IMG/VR virus record: IMGVR_UViG_3300018891_000001
Location: 151,871 to 215,870 of that record
Direction: 5' to 3' (one strand)
DNA length: 64,000 nucleotides
Made by a program: the position numbers and the translations under genes. The notes under the pieces are model-generated. The model had not been told where the DNA came from and did no database searches. It saw nothing but the letters and a program-made list of their open reading frames with translations. Numbering within the stretch: position 1 is the first letter of the stretch; the number at the start of each line of letters is the position of its first letter. Shown here in pieces: positions 3,804-48,601 of this stretch.

Positions 3804-3920
3804 ATGGAAGTATTATTAGTGGCTGGAACCATTATGATTATGACCAACACTATGGTGCTGTTAATGTTAGCACCTACTATTTTAAAAGAGGTGAAGCATG
3901 GTGCCACTCGGAAATTTTAA
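3804..3920 (+). CDS. Small hydrophobic peptide
   Basis: GGAGG SD, MEVLLVAG...; coupled to the FtsK start. Confidence 0.45.
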   Translation: MEVLLVAGTIMIMTNTMVLLMLAPTILKEVKHGATRKF

Positions 3921-6204
3921 ACGACTCTTTCAACCTAGTTTAATTCAAAACGAAAAAGACGTATCTTATCATTTGCCTTCTTTATCACGAGCAGAAGCAA
4001 AAGCCCTTCTCTCCGCTCCCTTAGCGGGGGGAGGGGTCTTTGGCCTAGAAGCCCACCAAACAAAAGACCATGAAAGTCTTATTTTTTTTGCTCCGCCTTA
4101 CTATAAAGTGGAATGGAACCTCGCAGACCGAGACGCTGTTTTTGAAAATCTTGAAACCTATAAAAAACAAATCACCATCATGCAACTATATACGAGTAAA
4201 TCCTCATTGTTTCCTCTCTCCATTGAATATACTCAGTCTTTTTGGGAACAGGTTCGGCAATTTGCAGCTGATGATATCGGAATTATTTATCAAATTGTAC
4301 TTGCATACCGACAAGACCGATGGAAAGAACGAATCAAGGAGCAATATCAACTGTATCTAAGTGGAATCCAATCTCCCGCTGATCAAAAATGGGTACGCAG
4401 TATTCAAAATCGAATTAATCACTCCTTAGATCATCTCTTGCAATGGGAGTTCAAATATGCCCCTATTCCTGAAGTGGAACAGAAACTAAAAGAAAATGGA
4501 TTTCGATATAGTATTCGGCTCATTCTTTATGGCGGTAATCGAGCGAGGCGAAGAAAACTAATACATGAAATACAACAAATTTTACGAACCATGGAGTATA
4601 TCAATGAATGGAAAGTGAATACCTTTTTTGCGTTTGACGATATTATTCAGAATATCCAAAAACGCAAGCTCGATAATGTAGGAAAGCAACAAGTCTTATG
4701 TGTATCCGAATTGCTGCCATTTCTGATGTCCGAACATGTAGTGTACATTGAAAAACCGGCCATAAAAAAGGTAACAAAAACAAAGGTAAAAAATCCATTC
4801 GATCTCCTGCCGATAGGCAAGAAAATTCAACAAGTCGATGGGAGTCAAATAGCTCAAAAATTTGTTTACGCTCTCCAAGAGTTAAAGGTAATTAAAGAAG
4901 AAATTGTTGCTAAACGAGTTCAATGTGGGCCAATCATGATGAAAATCACCTTTGATTTACCGAAGGGGATGCGTCTTTCGGATATAACAAAGAAAAATAT
5001 GATTGAGGATATTCAGACTCATATGGGAGTCAAACATCTACAGATCTTACAAGGGGAGGATACGGGAGAATTCGATATTATGTTGCCACAAGAAAAAAGG
5101 CAAAAAATCTTTTTACGAGATTATGTGGATACCTCTGAATTTATGGAGTTTGCCGGACAACATCCACTTCCATTCTTTGTAGGGGTGGACGAAATAGGAC
5201 GCTCCATTTTTCGTTGTCTAAGTGAAATTCGTCATATTCTTGTAGCAGGAACAACCGGATCCGGCAAAAGCGTGTGGATGAATCAACTTATTCTTACCTT
5301 GTTATTAATTCGCAAACCCGATGAACTTCAATTTTATATGATTGATCTAAAACAAGTGGAACTCACCTGCTTTCAAGATTTCCCTCATGTGCGAGAAGTC
5401 ATCACAGATGCGAACAAAGCTATTCACCTACTTAGGAAAATCCAAAAAGAGATGGACAGACGTTATCAATTATTTAGTGAAACAGGAGTAAAAAACATTG
5501 CCTTGTATAATAGAAAACATCCTCATCAAAAGCTCCCTTATATTGTGTGCATTATTGATGAATATGCGGAATTAGCATTACGAACGGATAGTATACATGA
5601 ACTCGTTCAAAGTATGGCACAACTCGCAAGGGCTGCTGGCATCCACTTGATTATTGCAACCCAAGATCCACGAGTTGAAGTAATCCCAGGAATTATTAAG
5701 TCCAACATGCCGGGGAAAATCGGTTTCCGTTGCTCTAATGGAAACAGTTATCTAACATTTTTAAATACGAAACCACCTTTTAACCTATTAGGAAACGGGG
5801 ATGGGGTCATGAGCTTTGAGGGGCAAATAGAGGAGCATATTCGCTTTCAGGGATGTCTGATTATCGATGATCCCAAAAACGAAGGGCTTGAAAGTCAGTT
5901 GATTGCACAAATCGCAAGTCATATGGACGACTATGAAGGAGTAGATTTACCAGAATTAGAGGAAACAGAAGAAGTGCATATAGAAGAAACAGAGACAGAA
6001 ATAGACCGACTTAAACGCATTATTGCTCAAACAGGGGAAACAAGGGTATCACAACTAAGGGAAATGATGAAAATTAACATCAATCGATTGAATGATTTGA
6101 TGAGGGAACTCGCAGAAGAAGGGTGGCTGCAAAAGCCAGAATCCAAACAGCAAGGATACCAATTAATTGCACCAGAAGAGGAATTGGAAAAGTGGAGACA
6201 ATAA
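3898..6204 (+). CDS. FtsK/SpoIIIE-family DNA translocase
   Basis: HILVAGTTGSGKS, MIDLKQVEL, IIDEYAEL, ARAAGIHLIIATQ, LLGNGDG; C-terminal gamma-like winged helix. Confidence 0.92.
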   Translation: MVPLGNFKRLFQPSLIQNEKDVSYHLPSLSRAEAKALLSAPLAGGGVFGLEAHQTKDHESLIFFAPPYYKVEWNLADRDAVFENLETYKKQITIMQLYTSKSSLFPLSIEYTQSFWEQVRQFAADDIGIIYQIVLAYRQDRWKERIKEQYQLYLSGIQSPADQKWVRSIQNRINHSLDHLLQWEFKYAPIPEVEQKLKENGFRYSIRLILYGGNRARRRKLIHEIQQILRTMEYINEWKVNTFFAFDDIIQNIQKRKLDNVGKQQVLCVSELLPFLMSEHVVYIEKPAIKKVTKTKVKNPFDLLPIGKKIQQVDGSQIAQKFVYALQELKVIKEEIVAKRVQCGPIMMKITFDLPKGMRLSDITKKNMIEDIQTHMGVKHLQILQGEDTGEFDIMLPQEKRQKIFLRDYVDTSEFMEFAGQHPLPFFVGVDEIGRSIFRCLSEIRHILVAGTTGSGKSVWMNQLILTLLLIRKPDELQFYMIDLKQVELTCFQDFPHVREVITDANKAIHLLRKIQKEMDRRYQLFSETGVKNIALYNRKHPHQKLPYIVCIIDEYAELALRTDSIHELVQSMAQLARAAGIHLIIATQDPRVEVIPGIIKSNMPGKIGFRCSNGNSYLTFLNTKPPFNLLGNGDGVMSFEGQIEEHIRFQGCLIIDDPKNEGLESQLIAQIASHMDDYEGVDLPELEETEEVHIEETETEIDRLKRIIAQTGETRVSQLREMMKININRLNDLMRELAEEGWLQKPESKQQGYQLIAPEEELEKWRQ

Positions 6205-6224
6205 TCTCCACTTTTTTGTGGTAT

Positions 6225-6253
6225 TTTACAGAATAGCAAAACTATGATACTAT
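6225..6253 (+). promoter_or_regulatory. sigma-A promoter of rep
   Basis: TTTACA-N17-TACTAT with TG extension. Confidence 0.6.
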
Positions 6254-6295
6254 GAAAAGAGAGAGAAAAAACAAAATTCTACAAAAATAGACAGG

Positions 6296-6360
6296 AAAAA
6301 ACCCTTTACTTAGGGGGTAAAGGGTTCGAAAGGTAATATGCGCATATACAATATTCAACT
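6296..6360 (-). ncRNA. Predicted ~65-nt countertranscript (copy-control antisense RNA)
   Basis: Perfect - strand promoter at 6367-6395; ends in hairpin AACCCTTTAC/GTAAAGGGTT plus U tract; antisense to the rep leader. Confidence 0.7.
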
Positions 6361-6366
6361 ATCTTT

Positions 6367-6395
6367 ATTATAATGCGTATTCCTTTCCCTGTCAA
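6367..6395 (-). promoter_or_regulatory. Consensus sigma-A promoter driving the antisense RNA
   Basis: TTGACA-GGGAAAGGAATACGCAT(17)-TATAAT. Confidence 0.85.
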
Positions 6396-6415
6396 AAAGG
6401 AAAGGAGATTTTTTT
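6380..6415 (+). terminator. Conditional attenuator hairpin containing the rep SD
   Basis: TTCCTTTCC/GGAAAGGAG stem followed by T7, immediately before the rep ATG. Confidence 0.65.
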
Positions 6416-6418
6416 CGA

Positions 6419-6970
6419 ATGGAACACGAAAAACTGAATATCTTTGATCCGAATGTCATTTACTACGTGCAACTGCCAACAGGAAAGACTCGGAGATTGA
6501 GTGAAGAAGAACTAGAAAAAATAACACTCAATTCCCCCAACAACATTCCTGAGTTAAACGGTAAAAAGACATGGATCAGTAACTACGTTGCTACGTTCTG
6601 GATGCCGTTTATGAAGCCAGGGCCATTTGCGGTTTACGTTCAATTGCAGAAAATGGCATATGGGGATAAAGATCATGCATTTCCATCTGTTCCGTATTTA
6701 GCCATGATTCTGGGTATTAGTGAACGAACTGTACAAAATTACATTGATCATTTGGTGGATCTGGGATTCGTAATTGTATTAGAACGGTTTGAAGCACAAA
6801 GCAACCGGCAGCTAAGTAATTTATATTTGCTATCAACAACGACTCCGTTTCTTCCTAGGGAGAAGTATGAGAAGTTGCCGAAGAAGTTACAAAGAGAACA
6901 TGACCGATTTATGGATTACATAAAGTTTAAAAAGATTTTACACGAAGAACGAATTCCTGACTATGAGTGA
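6419..6970 (+). CDS. HTH replication initiator (HTH_36-like Rep)
   Basis: AFPSVPYLAMILGISERTVQNYIDHLVDLGFV...SNLYLL; adjacent iterons. Confidence 0.75.
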   Translation: MEHEKLNIFDPNVIYYVQLPTGKTRRLSEEELEKITLNSPNNIPELNGKKTWISNYVATFWMPFMKPGPFAVYVQLQKMAYGDKDHAFPSVPYLAMILGISERTVQNYIDHLVDLGFVIVLERFEAQSNRQLSNLYLLSTTTPFLPREKYEKLPKKLQREHDRFMDYIKFKKILHEERIPDYE

Positions 6971-6971
6971 T

Positions 6972-6998
6972 TAGCCCGCATTAGCGGGCTATTTTTTT
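6972..6998 (+). terminator. rep terminator
   Basis: TAGCCCGC-ATTA-GCGGGCTA-T7. Confidence 0.85.
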
Positions 6999-7008
6999 AT
7001 GCTATTTT

Positions 7009-7252
7009 CTATCCACAAAAATCTGTGGATATGTGTATAAAAGGGGATGAAAATTTTACAGGGGGGAAACCGGGTGAAAAAATTGCAGGGGGATATCTAG
7101 GGGGTGAAAATTTTACAGGGGGATATTTAGGGGGTGAAAAATTTGCAGGGGGATTTATACACAAGAGGGGAGGGTGAAAATTTTACGGGGGTGTAATTTT
7201 TTCAGGGAAAGGATGAAAAATCTGCGGGGAACGACTGAAAAATCTGCATCCG
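7009..7252. repeat. Replication origin: ~8 iterons and 4 DnaA boxes
   Basis: GG(G/A)TGAAAAWTTTRCAGGGG-like repeats, three at 30-bp period; DnaA boxes at 7009-17, 7024-32, 7032-40, 7155-63. Confidence 0.8.
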
Positions 7253-7457
7253 AATAAATACTAAGAAGAAGAAAGTCAATTTGAAGAAGTTTTTTAATGA
7301 ATATCCCTTGTCTACCTTTTCTCTGATAAAAGACATTGCAGTTAGAACTATGTTCTAAATGCACAGTCGAAATGAGAGTGCAAGGGAAATTCATAAGAAG
7401 AAGAAATGGAGACAAAAAAAGCAAATGCGACAATGCATCTGCTTCGTGATTGGATAC

Positions 7458-7682
7458 TTATTTTTTTAACATGAATCGTGGAATGGCATAGAAAAGAGCT
7501 GAAAGGGCTAAACCGACCAAAAAACTACCTAATGTAGCATTCGGATCAAAAAATGAACCAATGGCTGAGCACAAAAACATAGTGCCCAGAATATTTGGAA
7601 TCAAACCTTTCCACCCATGCATCATATGTAACTTCCAAAAAGCTATGACTAAGATAAAGAATAAAATTGTGCTGAGACTCAT
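7458..7682 (-). CDS. Small three-TM membrane protein
   Basis: GGAGG SD; hydrophobic. Confidence 0.6.
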   Translation of the reverse strand: MSLSTILFFILVIAFWKLHMMHGWKGLIPNILGTMFLCSAIGSFFDPNATLGSFLVGLALSALFYAIPRFMLKK

Positions 7683-7839
7683 CTTATTCCTCCTACTAAA
7701 TCAAGTAAAAAGAAGACCTATGCCTTAAAAGCAAAGGTCTCAAAGTTTGGTGAATACAAAGTTATAAAATAACTAGGTTGGAAGATAATAAAAGAGACAG
7801 CATCATTATATCCAATCCTAAGCGATTCGTCTAGAAAAA

Positions 7840-9132
7840 TTAGAACAGCGAAAATTCCATTTGCCCTTCAATTACTTTACGACTTTTGAATTCTGCCATT
7901 TTGAGTTCCACCTCATACACTGCTGTTTCGCATACATGATGAGACGAAATACGATAAGAGGCTAATCGCTGCTGTCGTTCTTCTAAAAATTTTTGATTGC
8001 TTTCTACAAGCTGACGAATGATTTCAGCTTCAGAGCGACTTAATTTCGCATTAAACGGTGGATTGGTTGTAATACATTCAAACTTGATCTCTCTAGCATG
8101 GGCTTTTATAATTTGAATTTTTCGATCATCCGAAAGAGAATTCCACGGTTGATGCAAATCCTCCTCATATTGAAAAATCTCACGTTTTCGCAAATCTACT
8201 GGATGAACAAAAATATCTATTTGTTTACTTTCTTCTTCGAAAATCCGGATAGGTGCTCGGTATTCTCCCAATAGTGAATTTCCCCAATAAATACGAGTAT
8301 CCGTATTAAACTCAAAATATCGGTGAATGGTTTTTGTTTCTGGGTTAATATGCAATCCCATAATCGGTTTTGGCACATATAAAAGAGAAGGCAAAAATAA
8401 AAAGGCTTGAATACAAGCCACTTTTACCATCGTTAAACTTAAATCAGCACCTACTAAATTTAAGCAATTGGATGGCAGCACCATAGCAGCACCACCAATA
8501 CAAGGTTCAAACTGACTATCCGTAGGAGAAGAATTTAGCATCATATTGATAGCTTCTGTTACTTGAATAGGAGTTGGAAAATAATCCAAATGTCCCTTTT
8601 GGCCATGTTCAGCCACAAAAGTAGACAATACATCCGTGGGCTCTAAAAATAATAAATCCAAACTGAATTCCCGATACAACTCTTCCCAAAGAGAATCTGG
8701 AATCGAAGGACGTTTGCAATAGCTAATGCCTAATGCATAACCAATCCATTCAATAAAATCCGTAATCCGATATCCCCGATGATATACTCGATCCATGCAT
8801 TTGGTTAACATTTTATAAGCAGGAGTATTCATGATGGGCGAAGACCGAACCGGATTTTTCGGCATATCTCCATCTTGGTAAGATCCTTTGGCCAAGATAG
8901 AAAGCCACGCATACCAACGACCATACAGCATGGTTTCAATCATCAAGCCCATTCCACGCATCCAGCCAAACCGGTACGAATCTTTCACATCTTGGGGTGG
9001 TTCTGTCCAAAGAGGAGAGTATTGAAGTTCTAATAATTTTCGTTGAATCTCCAGCCATTGTTCTGGGGAAAGGGAAGCACAGAACTCTTGGCCACGACGT
9101 TCCGATTCCAATCGACCATATGATTTTTTCAT
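7840..9132 (-). CDS. N6-adenine DNA methyltransferase (HsdM-like, orphan)
   Basis: YFPTP, FEPCIGG (motif I), GADL, GNSL, TNPPF (motif IV). Confidence 0.75.
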   Translation of the reverse strand: MKKSYGRLESERRGQEFCASLSPEQWLEIQRKLLELQYSPLWTEPPQDVKDSYRFGWMRGMGLMIETMLYGRWYAWLSILAKGSYQDGDMPKNPVRSSPIMNTPAYKMLTKCMDRVYHRGYRITDFIEWIGYALGISYCKRPSIPDSLWEELYREFSLDLLFLEPTDVLSTFVAEHGQKGHLDYFPTPIQVTEAINMMLNSSPTDSQFEPCIGGAAMVLPSNCLNLVGADLSLTMVKVACIQAFLFLPSLLYVPKPIMGLHINPETKTIHRYFEFNTDTRIYWGNSLLGEYRAPIRIFEEESKQIDIFVHPVDLRKREIFQYEEDLHQPWNSLSDDRKIQIIKAHAREIKFECITTNPPFNAKLSRSEAEIIRQLVESNQKFLEERQQRLASYRISSHHVCETAVYEVELKMAEFKSRKVIEGQMEFSLF

Positions 9133-9484: not shown

Positions 9485-9688
9485 TTAATTAGCTTTCACC
9501 AATTCATACTCATCTTTATTTAATACTATGTCACCGCCAAATGATTCTTCATAAACCGTAACCGATTGATCTTCTTTATCATAGTATTTTACTTCATAGA
9601 TCTTTCCGATTAAATGTTCAATCGACAATTGTGCGACAGCAATACGTTGTGTGTCAGGTTTACTTGCGATGACTCTAACCTTCATCAT
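9485..9688 (-). CDS. Hypothetical protein
   Basis: GGAG SD; overlaps the upstream stop. Confidence 0.55.
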   Translation of the reverse strand: MMKVRVIASKPDTQRIAVAQLSIEHLIGKIYEVKYYDKEDQSVTVYEESFGGDIVLNKDEYELVKAN

Positions 9689-10275
9689 TTTACTCCTTTA
9701 TCCTTTTTGTATCCTTTTTGCATATCGTCCAATAATTTTTGGAGTTCTTTTCGTTCTTCCATTTCTTTTTCTGTTAAAATTTCCTGAATCTCTAATTCAT
9801 TTAACAAGTCTATGTATTCTTTATACAATGGTATCAAGGTTTCCTTGCTTGGTTCCATTCCTTCTATATATTGAGATTCAGGAACGCTGTTTCTTTCTAA
9901 CCAATCAGCCAATTTTTCCAGACTCCACTTTTTATTTGCAACCAATTTTGAAACAAAGTATAATTCCCAATCTGATATTACGACCACATATCCGTTAAAT
10001 TCCAAAAAAGTGGCTGCAGTAATATATGCTGTACGTTTGTTTCCATCCACAAAGTACTGACTTGTGGCTAGAGTATGCATATATACTGCAGCTTTGGTAA
10101 ATAAACCTGGATATGGTTCATACGTATGCCCACCAAAATCATAAGTTTGAAACGGTTTATATGCCAGACTATCAATAAGACCTGGTTCATACTCACCAGG
10201 CAACCCACCAAACTCTTGTAGAGCCATGTCATGAAACATTCGAATATGTTTGGGCTCTAAAGATTCAATGTTCAA
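9685..10275 (-). CDS. Doc/Fic-family protein (catalytic His replaced by Gln)
   Basis: H....FGG..G; KAA.Y..LA; QYFVDGNKRTA. Confidence 0.85.
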   Translation of the reverse strand: MNIESLEPKHIRMFHDMALQEFGGLPGEYEPGLIDSLAYKPFQTYDFGGHTYEPYPGLFTKAAVYMHTLATSQYFVDGNKRTAYITAATFLEFNGYVVVISDWELYFVSKLVANKKWSLEKLADWLERNSVPESQYIEGMEPSKETLIPLYKEYIDLLNELEIQEILTEKEMEERKELQKLLDDMQKGYKKDKGVK

Positions 10276-30399: not shown

Positions 30400-31596
30400 T
30401 TAAGAAAAAGAAATTACGGTAGATTCTACCACTTCAGAAGGCAATTCGTCTAAAAATCGAGAAGGTTTATAGATACGAGATTTTCCGTCTTGTTGTGATC
30501 TTTGTTCTGCCCATGTGATCAATAATTCTTTTTCTGCACGGGTAATACCAACATAAGCCAAACGACGTTCTTCTTCGATATCTTTTTCACTTTGACTTCT
30601 CCAAGAAGGAAATATGCCTTCATTCCAACCGATGAGAAATACTACTGGGAATTCTAATCCTTTTGAAGCATGCATCGTCATCAAACGAACAGAGTCTGTT
30701 TTCTTATTGTTTTCAGAATCTGTCACTAATGAAATGTCTTGTAAGAAATCTTCTAAGGTTTTATCTGGATTTTCTGTTTCATATTTATCGACAAGAATAA
30801 GAAACTCTTTTAGATTGTCAATTTTCTCATCTGCTTTCTTGTCGTTTTCATAATACGCCCAAAGACCTGATTGTTCTAATACATAACGAACATAAGTGGA
30901 CATTAGTAAGCCGCTTTCTAATTTCTTTTCAAAGTGATCGAGCAAATCGATAAATGCTGTAATTTTGCTAAGTGAACGTTTATTGATACTTGGAATGTCA
31001 CTAGCATTTTTTAAAGCTCGATACACACTGACTTTATGAATATGTGCGTATTCTTCAATTTTATCTTGAGAGGTCTTACCAATTCCACGAGATGGCTTAT
31101 TCAGAATACGCAAAATAGCTGTATCATCTTTTCGATTAAAAATCGATCTTAGATACGCAATGGCATCTTTAATCTCTTCCCGATCATAAAAACCGTGACC
31201 ACCAATGACTTGATATGGAATAAATTGATTACGGAAGAAGTCTTCAATGACTCGAGACTGGGCATTTCCACGATATAAAATGGCAAAATCCTCATATTTG
31301 TATCCATCTTGAAGAACCTTCTTTTTAATCATGGCTGCAATATAAGCGGCTTCTTGATATTCATTTCCACAACCAATGACTTTAATGGTTTCTCCTGGCT
31401 CTCTTGGTGTTCGTAATGTCTTTTCTTTTTGGTGTTTATTGTATTTTACTATTTCATTTCCTGCATGAACAATATTGCGAACAGAACGATAATTTTGTTC
31501 TAGTTTCACAACAGTAGCTTGTGGAAAATACCGCTCAAAATTCAGAATAATATTAATATCAGAACCACGGAAACCATAAATGGCTTGATAATCGTC
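30400..31596 (-). CDS. pcrA: PcrA/UvrD helicase, exon 2
   Basis: DDYQAIYGFRG, LEQNYRS, MTMHASKGLEF, EERRLAYVGITRA. Confidence 0.93.
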   Translation of the reverse strand, partial: DDYQAIYGFRGSDINIILNFERYFPQATVVKLEQNYRSVRNIVHAGNEIVKYNKHQKEKTLRTPREPGETIKVIGCGNEYQEAAYIAAMIKKKVLQDGYKYEDFAILYRGNAQSRVIEDFFRNQFIPYQVIGGHGFYDREEIKDAIAYLRSIFNRKDDTAILRILNKPSRGIGKTSQDKIEEYAHIHKVSVYRALKNASDIPSINKRSLSKITAFIDLLDHFEKKLESGLLMSTYVRYVLEQSGLWAYYENDKKADEKIDNLKEFLILVDKYETENPDKTLEDFLQDISLVTDSENNKKTDSVRLMTMHASKGLEFPVVFLIGWNEGIFPSWRSQSEKDIEEERRLAYVGITRAEKELLITWAEQRSQQDGKSRIYKPSRFLDELPSEVVESTVISFS

Positions 31597-32079
31597 CGTA
31601 AATCTTGGAATTTCATCGCATATACACTTTGACCATAATTACCAACTACATTGTAATAACCATAACAGGCTATTACAGGAAGGAAGTTGATAAATATGGG
31701 TTGGTTATCCACCAAACAAGAAGCAATGAAACGCCATTACATTGCGGTATGGCGGTAAACAACAGGTAAAGCGCATCTTTGAATACATATACAAGGATGT
31801 AACCATTTACCTTCAAAGGAAATACGAGAAATTCTCTCTGCTATTCTCATAGCAGACGAGACCATATCTTCACTCTCTTTCAAGAGGTCCGGCGCTTCGG
31901 TTGTAGGAGTTTCACCTGCACCCTACTCCCTTTCGGGATGGTCGTTACACCTTCCTCATATGAGGCTTGGCACGGGATTGTCTCTCGTTACCGAGTCACT
32001 TCCCCCGTTAGCAACGTGTCCTTCTCACGTCACACCCTGCAAGTACAGGTTCACCGGATTTAACGTGAGCTAACAATTA
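31597..32079 (-). ncRNA. Group I intron (483 nt) in PcrA motif III
   Basis: VVG|DDYQ restored on splicing; P1 GUGGGU/GCUCAC; AACGGGGGAA, AATCCCGTG, P7 GACCA/TGGTC; terminal G. Confidence 0.9.
31730..31852 (+). pseudogene. Relic C-terminus of a LAGLIDADG endonuclease, antisense within intron 2
   Basis: LRYGGKQQVKRIFEYIYKDVTIYLQRKYEKF resembles the intron-1 HEG end YRFGG...FLYNNATIYLERK. Confidence 0.7.
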
Positions 32080-32862
32080 ACCCACGACAAACAAATTGTA
32101 TTGCGGCGCAGCAAGTAATAATAATAATTGAAATTGTGCATAGTTGGCATCTTGATACTCATCACTCATGACATATTGAAATTTTCCTTGCCAATAATCA
32201 CGAGCTTCCGGATAATCACGAAGCAAAATCACTGTATTCATAATGAGATCGCCAAAATCCATTGCGTTCATTTGCTTCATTTGGAATTGATAATGCATAT
32301 ACACTTGTGCCATGACTTGCTCATCAGCTGTTTCAGCTACGTGGTATGTACAGTATTCTGGATCCCATAGATTGTTTTTGGCATTATCTATATAGCTGAG
32401 TGCATACCCAGGCTTGTATTTGTCTTGAATCCCCATTTGCTTATAAATACGCTCAATGACTTGCAAAACATCGCCTGTATCATAAATAACAAACTTGCAT
32501 CGTTTGTTTTTTTCATCTTGCTCATATCCTAATAAATGACCGTGTTTGCGTAAAATGCGTACACATAAGCTATGAAATGTACCCATCCAAATGTGCTTCA
32601 TCGGTTCTTCGCCCACTACTTTTTCTAAACGTTCTTTCATTTCCCGAGCAGCTTTATTGGTAAATGTAGCACAAAAGATATTTTTTGCTTGAATTCCTTG
32701 CGATAGCATATTAGCAATTCGAACTGTTAAGGTTTTTGTTTTACCGGACCCGGCTCCCGCTAAAACAAGAACCTGACCATTAATCGTCGTAGCCGCTTCT
32801 CGTTGTTCTGGATTAAGTTCATTAAGCATATTTGATACTTCCCATAAATTTAATGTAGACAT
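32080..32862 (-). CDS. pcrA: PcrA/UvrD helicase, exon 1
   Basis: LNPEQ, AGAGSGKT, TFTNKAAREM, GTFHS, DEYQD. Confidence 0.93.
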
Positions 32863-46241: not shown

Positions 46242-46925
46242 CTAATTTATAATTGACTCTGCCCATTCGTGAAAAGTCAAATTCTGAGGGGCAGGACGTA
46301 AAATACTGTAATCAAAAGGTTTTCCTTGTGATTCCTCAAGCAATTGTCGAAGTGGCTTACTGGTTAAATTTACTTGTCTCGGAAAATACAAGTGATCATT
46401 AAATGGCGTATGAAGCCATCGGTGTGGAAAGGTCTGTAGCTGAACTAAATCTTTAACAGTTTCATCACTGTAATAGCACATACGACCATTTTCGTATACG
46501 TTGGAATACGGATAGCGATAAAGCTTAGTATCATCTCGTAAAAAACGGTCTTTGTAAGCAAACACTTGGCGATTAGAAACTCGCTGATTTTTTACCGCAA
46601 AGAAAAACACCAAATTAGGAAACGGAACGTCTTGAAACACGCTTTGATGGTATTGAACAGTCGCTGTTGTTTCCGGATACGAAAGAAATACTAAATGGGA
46701 TTCATCGCTTTTCTTTGCATATTTGACAGTATTTAGAGGCAATGATGGACTAATTAAAATCGGTTTTGCCGGTTCCTCTTTTGGTTCATTGTAATCCTCT
46801 ACCAATGAAGATAATAAAAGTTCTGCTAATTGCTGCAAAGTAAGATGTAACGTTCTTTGTATTCCATTTTCCTCAAGCTCTACTTTAGCTAATTCCAGAT
46901 TATCAAGTGTAATCACTGCTTTCAT
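46242..46925 (-). CDS. Prokaryotic E2 (family D, PRTRC protein B-like)
   Basis: VPFPNLVF; LYRYPYSNVY.NGRMC (candidate catalytic Cys); PFNDHL. Confidence 0.75.
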   Translation of the reverse strand: MKAVITLDNLELAKVELEENGIQRTLHLTLQQLAELLLSSLVEDYNEPKEEPAKPILISPSLPLNTVKYAKKSDESHLVFLSYPETTATVQYHQSVFQDVPFPNLVFFFAVKNQRVSNRQVFAYKDRFLRDDTKLYRYPYSNVYENGRMCYYSDETVKDLVQLQTFPHRWLHTPFNDHLYFPRQVNLTSKPLRQLLEESQGKPFDYSILRPAPQNLTFHEWAESIIN

Positions 46926-47425
46926 AATAATCCCTCCTGCATAGAGGATGATAATGATTCTTGAGTGTTTTGTGTGGCTTTTTGAATATCCTGTTGAATT
47001 TGACTTAAAGCCATCCATAAATTTGACAACAAGCTCGAAAACATAGGGGTGCTATAATATTCAATCGTAAAATATCCGTCTTCTTGCCAATCCCCTTCAA
47101 AATCTTCGTAGTATAAACCTGAAGTTTGAACAGCATTTTTTATGGTTTCTTTTACTTGGGAAACCAGTATTTCTGGTATCATAGTCCAATCAAATAGAAA
47201 AGCAATTTCATAACAATGAGGGGTATCTGGTTCGTTTTTTGCTCGGAAAAAACGAAAACGATGTTCTAATCGTGTGATCGCCCGAAGAAAAAAGTCTTCA
47301 CCATTAATGCTTTGGTGTTTATCTGTTATATAATCTTCTCCAAGGTCATATAGAAATTTCATCATCATGACAACATCAATGGTTTCTGCAATTTCGTATC
47401 GTTCTTCTTCATAAAGAAGACTCAA
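46922..47425 (-). CDS. Hypothetical protein within the E1/E2 cassette
   Basis: Overlapping start and stop codons. Confidence 0.55.
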   Translation of the reverse strand: MSLLYEEERYEIAETIDVVMMMKFLYDLGEDYITDKHQSINGEDFFLRAITRLEHRFRFFRAKNEPDTPHCYEIAFLFDWTMIPEILVSQVKETIKNAVQTSGLYYEDFEGDWQEDGYFTIEYYSTPMFSSLLSNLWMALSQIQQDIQKATQNTQESLSSSMQEGLL

Positions 47426-47763
47426 AAGAATGCAACCTCCCTTCTTACGGTAGGCATCTGGCCTAAGTATTGAATAATATCTTCAATCTGAAACGATTGA
47501 ACCCCAATATGATCCCAATCCTCGTCATAAGCTCCTGCTTCATAGGAAGGCCAATACATCACCATATCTAATATCCATTCCAATTCTTCCTGGGTAACAG
47601 ATTGAAGAAATTCATCTGTAATGTTTTCCCTCCTCATGATTTCTCGGTACAATCGGAGTATGCGATAATTGATTTTACGCTCTTGATCTGAATAACGATT
47701 ATTAGCCGACTGTAAAGATTCCATAAATCTAGAAAAATCAAACCGCTTTTGCTTGTTTTTCAT
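47422..47763 (-). CDS. Hypothetical protein within the E1/E2 cassette
   Basis: Overlapping start and stop codons. Confidence 0.55.
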   Translation of the reverse strand: MKNKQKRFDFSRFMESLQSANNRYSDQERKINYRILRLYREIMRRENITDEFLQSVTQEELEWILDMVMYWPSYEAGAYDEDWDHIGVQSFQIEDIIQYLGQMPTVRREVAFF

Positions 47764-48601
47764 CTGAAGACCACCTCATCATTTGTTGCTCCTCAATATA
47801 CATAGGACGCATTAACATGGTTTGAGCATTGAAATTAACATAGTGTGACATAATCATGGATTCAGACAAAAGCATATTCAAATAACTCATCATTACAAGT
47901 GCAGCAGTTTCATTGGTTTGCATGCGCTGCGGATAATACAAAACTTGTTCTCCACATGCTTGCGTAGGCAAACGAGAATCGGTGTCTTCTAAAATATCCG
48001 GATATACCATTCCTACAGGTTCCAAAATTAATTGAGAATACCATTTGAATCCACATACAACTTGACCGGAGTATCCCATCTTCCGCTGAACCGAAGGAAT
48101 TTCCTCTGGGTTCACGGAGTCAATTCCACTATCGATATAAACAATGGTTGACATTTTTTCAAATAGTTGATGCATAATTTGACGGGTAGCATTATTATCC
48201 ACACACCCCAATAAAACAGGAATGTCCACATAAAAATGGGAACGATGATAAGAAAATAAATCCTGCAATTCCTTTACCTGTTCGATATAAGAAGCCCGAT
48301 AATGGATCGGGATTCCATATGCATTACTGTAACGATTGGCTAACACTTCTACTTTAGGAAGTCCTATATCTTGCTCAATAAAAGGCTGACGGTATACATT
48401 TTTCGGTTCTACCTGATCTCCGTCTACAATGACATAGCGATATGAAAATAATTCATTTTGCTGTGATAAGCTATACAATAATTTGGAAAGGCGTTGCAAT
48501 AAGTAACCTCCATTTCCACCTGTGCCAATTTGAATAATCTCAAAATGAAAATATTTATTTTGAGCAATGCGATCCCGCAATGAAATAACAGGTCGATGCA
48601 T
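47738..48601 (-). CDS. ThiF/E1-like adenylyltransferase (PRTRC type)
   Basis: IGTGGNGG, VDGD.VE.KN..RQ, K...LA, GCVDN..TR, QACG. Confidence 0.88.
   Translation of the reverse strand: MHRPVISLRDRIAQNKYFHFEIIQIGTGGNGGYLLQRLSKLLYSLSQQNELFSYRYVIVDGDQVEPKNVYRQPFIEQDIGLPKVEVLANRYSNAYGIPIHYRASYIEQVKELQDLFSYHRSHFYVDIPVLLGCVDNNATRQIMHQLFEKMSTIVYIDSGIDSVNPEEIPSVQRKMGYSGQVVCGFKWYSQLILEPVGMVYPDILEDTDSRLPTQACGEQVLYYPQRMQTNETAALVMMSYLNMLLSESMIMSHYVNFNAQTMLMRPMYIEEQQMMRWSSDEKQAKAV

What the first reader, a model, noticed from the sequence alone, without database searches (positions are those of the whole stretch)
6225..6418. Complete antisense-RNA attenuator controlling rep
Seen: a perfect - strand promoter (6367-6395) would make a ~65-nt RNA ending in a terminator near 6296. 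In the rep leader, GAAAGGTAATATGCGCAT (6328-6345) can pair with ATGCGTATTCCTTTC (6373-6387). This competes with a terminator hairpin TTCCTTTCC/GGAAAGGAG-T7 (6380-6415) that also buries the SD. The antisense RNA covers the antiterminator arm. Established: pT181 and Inc18 plasmids use this logic. Its combination with an iteron/DnaA origin and a short phage-like HTH Rep is unusual.
Basis: partly seen in the sequence, partly recalled or inferred. Interest (0 to 1): 0.68.

Follow-up and report, generated by a model that had tools for sequence, protein, structure and literature searches.

The report
Antisense-RNA switch controlling a replication gene
Upstream of the replication-initiator gene of a 216-kb phage-like circular element sits a small antisense-RNA gene and a refolding leader, a copy-number control of a well-known plasmid kind, here in a replicon family where I found no earlier report of it.

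Summary
On the - strand there is a promoter (6395..6367) that is the only perfect TTGACA-N16-18-TATAAT in the 215,870-bp genome. It is followed by an intrinsic terminator (6327..6299 plus U run), which predicts a ~65-nt RNA. In the rep leader, segment A (6328-6345) pairs with B (6373-6387). B can instead pair with the Shine-Dalgarno segment C (6399-6407), and that hairpin is followed by U7 (6409-6415).

Comparison decides it. Seven other Rep lineages (31-81% aa identity) keep the promoter at the same position, the antisense terminator, a lineage-specific A:B helix and the SD-burying hairpin, while their sequences differ. Cognate A:B duplexes average -19.5 kcal/mol against -11.5 for non-cognate pairs.

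The U run is found only in the window and its 81% sibling. The conserved output is therefore probably SD occlusion (pSK41-like), and this clade probably adds termination (pT181-like).

No RNA data exist for this element. Rep is an HTH_36 protein matching the N-terminal half of pBS72-type Reps. Verdict: real, a new member of a known kind, moderate interest.

The parts
6185..6218 (+). Intrinsic terminator of the upstream FtsK/SpoIIIE-like gene (3898-6204). It insulates the rep leader from read-through.
   Evidence: 14-bp stem followed by a T run. PF01580, E 1.2e-42.
6225..6253 (+). Likely rep promoter: TTTACA, 17-nt spacer, TACTAT, with TG (extended -10). Predicted start ~6260, giving a leader of ~159 nt.
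   Evidence: 9/12 plus TG. The same hexamers with a different spacer occur in L003, and + promoters sit at the equivalent place in L002, L004, L007 and L008.
6299..6327 (.). Hairpin T1. On the - strand it is followed by a U run (complement of 6296-6301) and is the terminator of the antisense RNA. On the + strand it is a leader stem-loop with no U tail, the likely first contact site.
   Evidence: An equivalent A-run plus hairpin is present in all eight lineages.
6296..6360 (-). Predicted ~65-nt antisense RNA: a weakly structured 5' tail complementary to segment A, then the terminator hairpin.
   Evidence: Predicted counterparts are 61-121 nt long in six other lineages.
6328..6345 (+). Segment A, the 5' arm of the antiterminator / anti-anti-SD helix. 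It lies inside the stretch covered by the antisense RNA.
   Evidence: Co-variation with B across lineages.
6367..6395 (-). Antisense promoter: TTGACA, 17-nt spacer, TATAAT. Its -35 hexamer sits in the loop of hairpin B:C.
   Evidence: 12/12. It is unique in the genome. It is conserved at -17..-24 from the rep start in eight lineages with differing spacers, and shuffles reach the observed score 0-11 times in 2000.
6373..6388 (+). Segment B, pyrimidine-rich. It pairs either with A (rep on) or with C (rep off).
6380..6415 (+). Hairpin B:C (9 bp, 10-nt loop, -10.7 kcal/mol) followed by A plus U7. It is terminator-like and contains the Shine-Dalgarno sequence (AAAGGAG, 6401-6407).
   Evidence: The U run is unique among 188 SD-preceded starts in this genome.
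6419..6970 (+). rep: a 183-aa HTH_36 replication initiator equivalent to the N-terminal half of 328-347-aa pBS72/Jenst-type Reps.
   Evidence: PF13730, E 1.4e-10; phrog_26369, E 1.2e-34, profile positions 25-174 of 347..
6972..6991 (+). rep terminator.
   Evidence: 8-bp stem with 6 GC pairs, followed by T7.
7009..7163 (.). Cluster of four DnaA-box-like 9-mers with at most one mismatch: 7009 (+), 7032 (-), 7040 (-) and 7155 (+).
   Evidence: four within 155 bp, against 0.29 per kb genome-wide.
7045..7229 (+). Seven 19-nt iterons of the form GGGTGAAAAWTTTRCAGGG, spaced 17-40 bp. Presumed origin.
   Evidence: within the genome the motif is essentially confined to this place (one 4-mismatch hit elsewhere). 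The Geobacillus relative has analogous repeats downstream of its rep.

Best explanation
This is a countertranscript-controlled RNA switch that sets how much Rep is made, and so how often the element's plasmid-type origin (DnaA boxes and iterons, 7009-7229) fires. rep is transcribed from a promoter at 6225-6253 with a ~159-nt leader. By default segment A (6328-6345), made first, pairs with B (6373-6387). Hairpin B:C then cannot form, the polymerase reads through, and the Shine-Dalgarno sequence is free. A very strong convergent promoter (6395..6367) makes a ~65-nt antisense RNA (6360 to 6296) in proportion to gene dosage. That RNA pairs with leader hairpin T1 and with A, which leaves B free to pair with C (6399-6407). 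In this element the hairpin is followed by U7, so it probably terminates transcription at about 6413-6416, four bases before the start codon (pT181-like attenuation). In any transcript that escapes, it hides the ribosome-binding site (pSK41-like occlusion). What is shown: the sequence elements, the predicted folds, and their conservation and co-variation across lineages. What is inferred: that the RNA is made, that it binds, that termination occurs, and that copy number is the variable being controlled.
For: Anatomy.

Switch behaviour: blocking the antisense-covered stretch flips the minimum-energy fold from A:B to the SD-burying hairpin in the window and in 5 of 6 other lineages.

Conservation in eight lineages at 31-81% Rep identity:
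- The - strand promoter scores 12, 12, 12, 12, 11, 11, 10 and 11 of 12 at the same position, with different spacers. Shuffles reach these scores 0-11 times in 2000.
- Seven of the eight have a predicted antisense terminator (the eighth, L020, was not run through that scan but shows the A-run plus hairpin).
- Cognate A:B duplexes average -19.5 kcal/mol against -11.5 for non-cognate pairs. Only 1 of 20000 permutations reaches the cognate sum, and the cognate partner ranks first in 6 of 8 lineages and second in the other 2.
- All eight have an SD hairpin of -10 to -15 kcal/mol with the -35 hexamer in its loop.

The leader is more conserved than the gene: 86.7% against 76.6% nucleotide identity between the window and L003.

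The antisense promoter is the only perfect consensus promoter in the genome.

For termination: the U7 tract is unique among 188 SD-preceded starts, and the 81% sibling has a 12-bp stem plus U6.

The logic matches the published pT181 mechanism, in which stem-loop IV contains the RBS, lies immediately upstream of the start codon and competes with a pre-emptor. It also matches the pSK41 mechanism (both in PMC5703833).
Against: There are no transcript data. The only public runs holding this DNA are DNA-type biocrust metagenome contigs.

The U run is absent in five of the eight lineages that keep everything else, so termination is not the conserved output.

The hairpin is modest (-10.7 kcal/mol, 10-nt loop), and 13 of 200 shuffles fold as well.

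Only about 30-40 nt separate A from B, so the time window for antisense action during transcription is short.

The rep promoter is only a 9/12 match, and its start site is inferred.

One lineage (L007) shows no predicted flip. Four relatives (L006, L010, L012, L013) lack the canonical antisense promoter.

No Rfam family matches.
Confidence: 0.6

Rival explanations
1. The antisense RNA and leader switch are the same, but the output is purely translational. Antisense binding induces hairpin B:C, which only hides the ribosome-binding site, as in pSK41. The U7 tract does not terminate to any useful degree.
For: Five of eight lineages keep the whole apparatus without any U run. In every lineage the hairpin contains the SD. 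The hairpin is weak for a terminator (-10.7 kcal/mol, 10-nt loop). pSK41 is a published precedent (PMC5703833).
Against: U7 lies directly after the stem and is unique among 188 gene starts. It is kept as U6 after a 12-bp stem in the sibling L003. The SD-to-ATG spacer is stretched to 10-11 nt in this clade, against 7-8 nt elsewhere, as if to make room for the U run. pT181's attenuator has the same placement (PMC5703833).
Confidence: 0.27
2. The convergent promoter acts mainly without the structural switch. It could work by transcriptional interference, with polymerases colliding between 6260 and 6395, or by creating a 65-bp RNA duplex that RNase III cleaves, destabilising rep mRNA.
For: The two promoters face each other about 110 bp apart. 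Convergent-transcription effects are documented for pIP501 (PMC4981023). The two RNAs are fully complementary over 65 nt.
Against: This does not explain the lineage-specific co-variation of A with B. It also does not explain the conserved SD-burying hairpin or the predicted flip on masking.
Confidence: 0.08
3. There is no regulatory antisense. rep is transcribed from the proximal + promoter (6345-6374, TATACA, 18-nt spacer, TATAAT), so the - strand RNA is a divergent, non-overlapping transcript of other or no function, and the pairings are incidental.
For: The + promoter scores 10/12, better than the distal one at 9/12.
Against: This promoter is not found in any relative. A transcript starting near 6381 would consist of the B:C hairpin plus U7 and would shut itself off. 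The conservation statistics for the - promoter and for A:B argue against incidental pairing. The leader is more conserved than the gene.
Confidence: 0.05

Closest known systems
pT181 (Staphylococcus) RNAI countertranscript attenuation of repC
   Same: A small antisense RNA is complementary to the rep leader. A pre-emptor arm competes for the 5' arm of a terminator-like stem-loop. That stem-loop contains the ribosome-binding site and lies immediately upstream of the start codon (PMC5703833). The window has the same order of parts.
   Different: The initiator here is an HTH_36 protein of a theta-type replicon with iterons and DnaA boxes, not a Rep_trans rolling-circle nickase. There is no sequence relationship. 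Termination here is untested.
pSK41 (Staphylococcus, RepA_N) RNAI control of rep
   Same: A ~83-nt antisense RNA acts on the upstream part of the leader and induces a distant stem-loop that sequesters the ribosome-binding site (PMC5703833). This is the behaviour predicted for most lineages of the present family.
   Different: The Rep family differs (Pfam finds HTH_36 only). The window's hairpin additionally carries a U7 tail. The antisense promoter here lies within the loop of the regulated hairpin itself.
Inc18 plasmids pIP501 / pAMbeta1 / pSM19035: RNAIII attenuation plus CopR
   Same: Antisense-RNA-induced premature termination in the rep leader of a theta replicon, with convergent sense and antisense promoters (PMC4981023).
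   Different: No CopR-like repressor gene lies upstream here. The upstream gene is an FtsK/SpoIIIE homologue with its own terminator. RNAIII is 136 nt. The Rep family differs, and here the attenuator overlaps the SD.
pMV158 RNAII
   Same: The antisense RNA is short and consists of a single-stranded 5' tail plus a terminator hairpin (PMC4485353; compare).
   Different: RNAII blocks translation initiation directly. It does not redirect leader folding from a distance.
pBS72 / pHT01 theta replicon of Bacillus subtilis, and Rep proteins of Brevibacillus phage Jenst and Bacillus phage PJN02/FADO
   Same: Rep residues ~14-182 are homologous to the N-terminal half of these Reps, at 23-31% identity. 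KX711616 is pBS72 (PMC8708921). Their leaders also show an A-run plus hairpin and a long-range helix.
   Different: Those Reps are 328-347 aa. The window's Rep is 183 aa, and no remnant of the C-terminal half exists in the genome. I found no paper in the held library describing antisense control for pBS72.

Membership tests
Countertranscript-driven transcription attenuation (mechanistic class of pT181 and pIP501) | An antisense RNA gene with its own promoter and terminator inside the rep leader, on the opposite strand. | tested here: met
   Promoter 12/12 and terminator. Predicted 65-nt RNA. Conserved in eight lineages.
Countertranscript-driven transcription attenuation (mechanistic class of pT181 and pIP501) | Mutually exclusive leader foldings: a pre-emptor/antiterminator helix against a terminator helix that share one arm, with the pre-emptor arm covered by the antisense RNA. 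| tested here: met
   Co-variation.
Countertranscript-driven transcription attenuation (mechanistic class of pT181 and pIP501) | The induced hairpin is an intrinsic terminator, that is, a stem followed directly by a U run. | tested here: inconclusive
   Met in sequence for the window (9 bp plus U7) and for L003 (12 bp plus U6). Weak in L002. Absent in L004, L007, L008, L011 and L020. The U7 is unique among 188 gene starts.
Countertranscript-driven transcription attenuation (mechanistic class of pT181 and pIP501) | Antisense-dependent truncated leader transcripts and a rise in copy number when the antisense RNA is lost. | not testable with these tools
   No RNA runs hold this sequence.
Antisense-induced RBS sequestration (pSK41 type) | Antisense binding upstream induces a stem-loop that contains the Shine-Dalgarno sequence. 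| tested here: met
   After masking the antisense-covered stretch, SD-window bases become paired to segment B in the window and in 5 of 6 other lineages. All eight lineages have the hairpin.
pT181 / Inc18 / pSK41 plasmid families (by descent) | An initiator of the Rep_trans, PriCT_1/RepR or RepA_N family respectively. | tested here: not met
   Pfam finds only HTH_36 (PF13730) and weaker HTH models. PHROGs places it in phrog_26369. NCBIfam finds nothing. The resemblance is one of mechanism, not of ancestry.
Inc18 two-component control | A small Cop repressor gene upstream of rep. | tested here: not met
   The upstream gene is a 768-aa FtsK/SpoIIIE homologue. No small HTH ORF lies between 6204 and 6419.
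pBS72-type Bacillus theta replicon (HTH_36 Rep plus DnaA boxes and repeats) | Rep homologous to pBS72 Rep. | tested here: met
   27.5% identity over residues 14-165 to the pBS72 (KX711616) and pHT01 Rep, but to its N-terminal half only.
pBS72-type Bacillus theta replicon (HTH_36 Rep plus DnaA boxes and repeats) | A full-length two-part Rep of ~340 aa. | tested here: not met
   The Rep is 183 aa. Six related proteins are 177-190 aa. There is no C-terminal-half remnant in the genome.
Iteron-type origin | Clustered direct repeats and DnaA boxes next to rep. | tested here: met
   Seven iterons at 7045-7229 and four DnaA-box-like sites at 7009-7163. Binding by Rep is untested.
Rfam PyrR binding site (RF00515) | A score at or above the family's gathering threshold. 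| tested here: not met
   28.4 bits against a threshold of 54, E 0.43, with the central helix not formed. The hit reflects only the shared layout of three hairpins and a terminator.

The most novel reading that the evidence does not exclude
One homologous leader scaffold (antisense promoter in the loop of an SD-containing hairpin, an upstream co-varying pre-emptor, and an antisense terminator that doubles as a leader hairpin) serves a whole superfamily of HTH_36 replicons of Bacillales plasmids, phage-plasmids and large phages, possibly including the pBS72/pHT01 vector replicon. Within that scaffold, lineages switch between translational occlusion and true transcription attenuation simply by gaining or losing a U run. 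In the 216-kb element the scaffold would set the copy number of a plasmid-like state of a jumbo phage.
Probability: 0.35. Interest if true: 0.6.

Novelty: new member of a known kind. Interest (0 to 1): 0.45.

Why it matters
It extends a classic copy-number control (antisense RNA redirecting the folding of the rep leader) to a replicon family in which I found no report of it. That family comprises short HTH_36 initiators related to pBS72 Rep, carried on large Bacillales plasmids and on a 216-kb phage-like circle from desert biocrust.

The family offers a natural series in which the same scaffold does or does not carry a terminator tail. This makes the evolutionary step between translational and transcriptional antisense control directly testable.

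There are practical uses. The segment 6150-7350 is a compact candidate mini-replicon with a predictable copy-number knob. The hint that pBS72/pHT01 has a related leader could matter for engineering Bacillus vectors.

Tried and rejected
Rfam search of 5000-8500: only a sub-threshold PyrR hit (28 bits against 54), on both strands. I rejected it as a resemblance of layout only.

Nucleotide searches of 6150-7350: one weak plasmid hit (Geobacillus, coding part only) and no phage hit.

Searches for relatives:
- Single-protein pattern scans of genome and viral contigs found nothing.
- The alignment-based scan of genome contigs found nothing.
- The DNA pattern CCTGTCAAAAAGG..AAAGGAG found nothing in viral contigs.
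- Relatives came instead from the protein word search plus contig look-ups, the alignment-based scans of viral and metagenome contigs and tblastn against plasmids and phages.

RNA evidence: the run search returned only four DNA-type biocrust metagenome runs from one study, kept as contigs. I did not use read laying, because contigs cannot show RNA ends, strand or level.

RNAalifold on a MAFFT alignment of the eight leaders recovered only part of hairpin T1, because the sequences are too diverged to align by sequence. I tested co-variation by cognate against non-cognate duplex energies instead.

The proximal + promoter at 6345-6374 as the rep promoter: rejected, because it is not conserved and the resulting transcript would shut itself off.

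A broken long Rep: rejected, because there is no C-terminal remnant.

GC skew as support for the origin: rejected. The skew sign change near 8000 follows gene orientation, and the locus lies at the skew maximum, not the minimum.

A PDB sequence search with Rep gave nothing significant.

I did not run the large representative-protein search, structure prediction or complex prediction, because the claim does not rest on them.

Full report
**Context.** The window is bases 151871-215870 of a 215,870-bp IMG/VR record whose 61-bp end overlap marks a circular assembly. An independent ENA assembly of 215,890 bp is identical over the 2,952 bp around rep. The only public runs that hold it are four biocrust metagenome runs from one study.

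The record encodes a capsid-family protein (PF05065, 26 bits) and a large terminase (PF03237, 33 bits). The window itself carries a sliding clamp, a primase, UvrD-, RecD- and SNF2-type helicases, ThyX, RecA and SSB. No CbiA-type ParA and no tyrosine integrase were found. The element is therefore a large phage, or a phage-plasmid, that carries a plasmid-type replicon.

**The locus.** An FtsK/SpoIIIE-like gene (3898-6204; PF01580, phrog_3551) ends in its own terminator at 6185-6218.

rep (6419-6970) encodes a 183-aa HTH_36 protein (PF13730, E 1.4e-10). It matches phrog_26369 'replication initiation protein', but only profile positions 25-174 of 347.

After the rep terminator (6972-6991) come four DnaA-box-like 9-mers (7009-7163, against 0.29 per kb genome-wide). 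Seven 19-nt iterons follow at 7045-7229; within the genome the motif is essentially confined to this place.

The GC-skew sign change near 8000 follows gene orientation. The locus sits where the two gene blocks converge, at the maximum of cumulative skew, so I do not use skew as evidence for the origin.

**Checking the observation.**
- The - strand promoter (6395..6367) is TTGACA, a 17-nt spacer, then TATAAT. It is the only perfect consensus promoter on either strand of the whole genome.
- The - strand terminator (stem 6327..6299, then a U run) predicts a 65-nt RNA running from about 6360 to 6296. It has a weakly structured 5' tail and one strong hairpin.
- In the sense leader, the minimum-energy fold (-40.6 kcal/mol, z -4.0) contains hairpin T1 (6299-6327) and the long-range helix A:B, that is 6328-6345 with 6373-6387.
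- B can instead pair with C (6399-6407). This gives a 9-bp hairpin of -10.7 kcal/mol that holds the Shine-Dalgarno sequence and is followed by A plus U7 (6409-6415), four bases before the ATG.
- If the antisense-covered stretch is made unavailable, the predicted fold switches from A:B to B:C.

**Comparative evidence.**

*Relatives found.* The protein word search and contig look-ups gave relatives at 81, 57, 57, 56 and 48% identity. tblastn added Geobacillus subterraneus plasmid pGspE55-1 (57%) and many distant large Bacillales plasmids. Profile-guided scans added lineages at 54, 45, 45 and 36%.

*Antisense promoter.* Eight lineages keep a - strand promoter whose -35 hexamer starts 17-24 nt before the rep start: the window, L003, L002, L004, L007, L008, L011 and B. 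cereus pG9842_140 (L020, 31%, a long Rep). Their scores are 12, 12, 12, 12, 11, 11, 10 and 11 of 12. The spacers differ in sequence. Dinucleotide shuffles reach these scores 0, 0, 0, 0, 1, 0, 11 and 0 times in 2000.

*Antisense terminator.* Seven lineages have a predicted - strand terminator that gives RNAs of 61-121 nt. L020 was not run through that scan, but it shows the same A-run plus hairpin.

*SD hairpin.* All eight have an SD-containing hairpin of -10 to -15 kcal/mol with the -35 hexamer in its loop.

*Co-variation of A with B.* Segments A and B differ from lineage to lineage yet stay complementary. Cognate duplexes average -19.5 kcal/mol, against -11.5 when A of one lineage is paired with B of another. 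The cognate partner ranks first in six lineages and second in two. Only 1 of 20000 permutations of partners reaches the cognate total. Within single lineages, shuffles reach the A:B energy 0-22 times in 500 (the L003 entry of that call used a misplaced A region and is not counted).

*Leader conservation.* Between the window and its 81% sibling, the noncoding leader is more conserved (86.7% nt identity) than the rep coding sequence (76.6%).

Taken together, this is strong evidence that the antisense gene and the three-segment switch are functional.

**Termination or translation?** The U run that would make B:C a terminator is present in the window (U7) and in L003, where a 12-bp stem of -14.8 kcal/mol is followed by U6. 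It is interrupted in the Geobacillus plasmid. It is absent in L004, L007, L008, L011 and L020. The output shared by the family is therefore most simply occlusion of the ribosome-binding site, as published for pSK41 (PMC5703833).

For the window itself, three things favour termination:
- Rep is the only one of 188 SD-preceded genes in this genome with T6 or more in the 20 nt before its start.
- The SD-to-start spacer is stretched to 10-11 nt in this clade, against 7-8 nt elsewhere.
- The layout equals that of pT181, whose terminator stem-loop IV also holds the ribosome-binding site and lies immediately upstream of the start codon (PMC5703833).

My probabilities are about 0.85 that the antisense switch is real, about 0.6 that termination contributes in this element, and about 0.8 that SD occlusion does.

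**Rivals.**
- A purely translational output is the main rival.
- Transcriptional interference or duplex-triggered cleavage could add to the control (compare pIP501, PMC4981023), but neither explains the A:B co-variation.
- The proximal + promoter (6345-6374, 10/12) is not conserved, and its transcript would begin inside B and consist of the off-state hairpin. I reject it.

**Relation to known systems.** In mechanism this is the pT181, pIP501 and pSK41 kind of control. By descent it belongs to none of those families:
- The initiator is HTH_36, not Rep_trans, PriCT_1 or RepA_N.
- There is no Cop repressor gene.
- Rfam has no matching family.

The Rep is homologous to the N-terminal half of the 328-347-aa Reps of pBS72/pHT01 (KX711616 is pBS72 according to PMC8708921), of Brevibacillus phage Jenst and of Bacillus phages PJN02/FADO. 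No remnant of the C-terminal half exists in the genome, and six related proteins are all 177-190 aa. The short form is therefore a genuine variant.

The long-Rep relatives also show an A-run plus hairpin and a long-range helix in their leaders. In the held literature I found no description of antisense control for pBS72.

**Verdict.** It is a new member of a known kind of control, in an uncharacterised replicon family on a phage-like element. It is of moderate interest, mainly for the natural variation between the two outputs and for the possible reach to a commonly used Bacillus vector replicon.

Noticed in passing
L018 (pHT01/pBS72 replicon) 490-800; also L021, L019, L022, L023: Leaders of the distant long-Rep relatives have an A-run followed by a long hairpin with a conserved loop motif GCGGCC(GCC)AA. 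They also have a long-range helix (for example ACUUGUAU with AUACAAGU) ahead of the SD. The common B. subtilis vector replicon may therefore be under a similar antisense control.
   Followed up: partly
L024 (Brevibacillus phage Jenst) 1200-1500: The phage Jenst rep region has an A8 run plus hairpin and a - strand promoter (TTGTCC, 17-nt spacer, TATAAT) upstream of its replication initiator. A partition gene lies next to it.
   Followed up: partly
window 30403-32862 (- strand): A UvrD-like helicase is split into two ORFs about 570 bp apart: the N-terminal domain at 32080-32862 and the C-terminal domain at 30403-31509. This could be an insertion, an intervening element or a genuinely split gene.
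   Followed up: no
window ~7000-8000 = genome ~159 kb; genome ~20 kb: The rep/iteron locus lies where the two gene blocks of the circle converge, at the maximum of cumulative GC skew. The blocks diverge and the skew is minimal near genome position 20 kb. Either skew follows transcription only, or a second (lytic?) origin lies near 20 kb.
   Followed up: partly
window 6223-6231 and 6307-6321: The -35 region of the rep promoter (ATTTTACAG) equals the iteron core. The T1 loop region TACTTAGGGGGTAAA resembles the iteron junction TATYTAGGGGGTGAA. These may be Rep-binding sites for autoregulation, or chance matches.
   Followed up: no
window 6419-6970: Rep is only the N-terminal half of the 328-347-aa Reps of relatives. 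No C-terminal-half remnant exists anywhere in the 216-kb genome, and a clade of 177-190-aa Reps exists.
   Followed up: yes
window 3898-6204 and L003 484-2787: A phage-type FtsK/SpoIIIE gene (phrog_3551, E 9e-169) sits immediately upstream of rep in both the window and its sibling. The genome shows no CbiA-type ParA and no tyrosine integrase. It might serve segregation of the element.
   Followed up: partly
window 46242-48601 (- strand); 9685-10275 (- strand): A ThiF/E1-like gene and a prokaryotic E2-family gene lie next to each other. A Fic/DOC-family gene lies a few kb beyond the origin.
   Followed up: no
L006 2850-3000; L010, L012, L013: Four relatives lack the canonical antisense promoter. 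L006 keeps the A-run hairpin and complementary A, B and C segments, but has only a weak TG-extended promoter candidate read by eye. In L010, rep follows another gene with no structured leader.
   Followed up: partly
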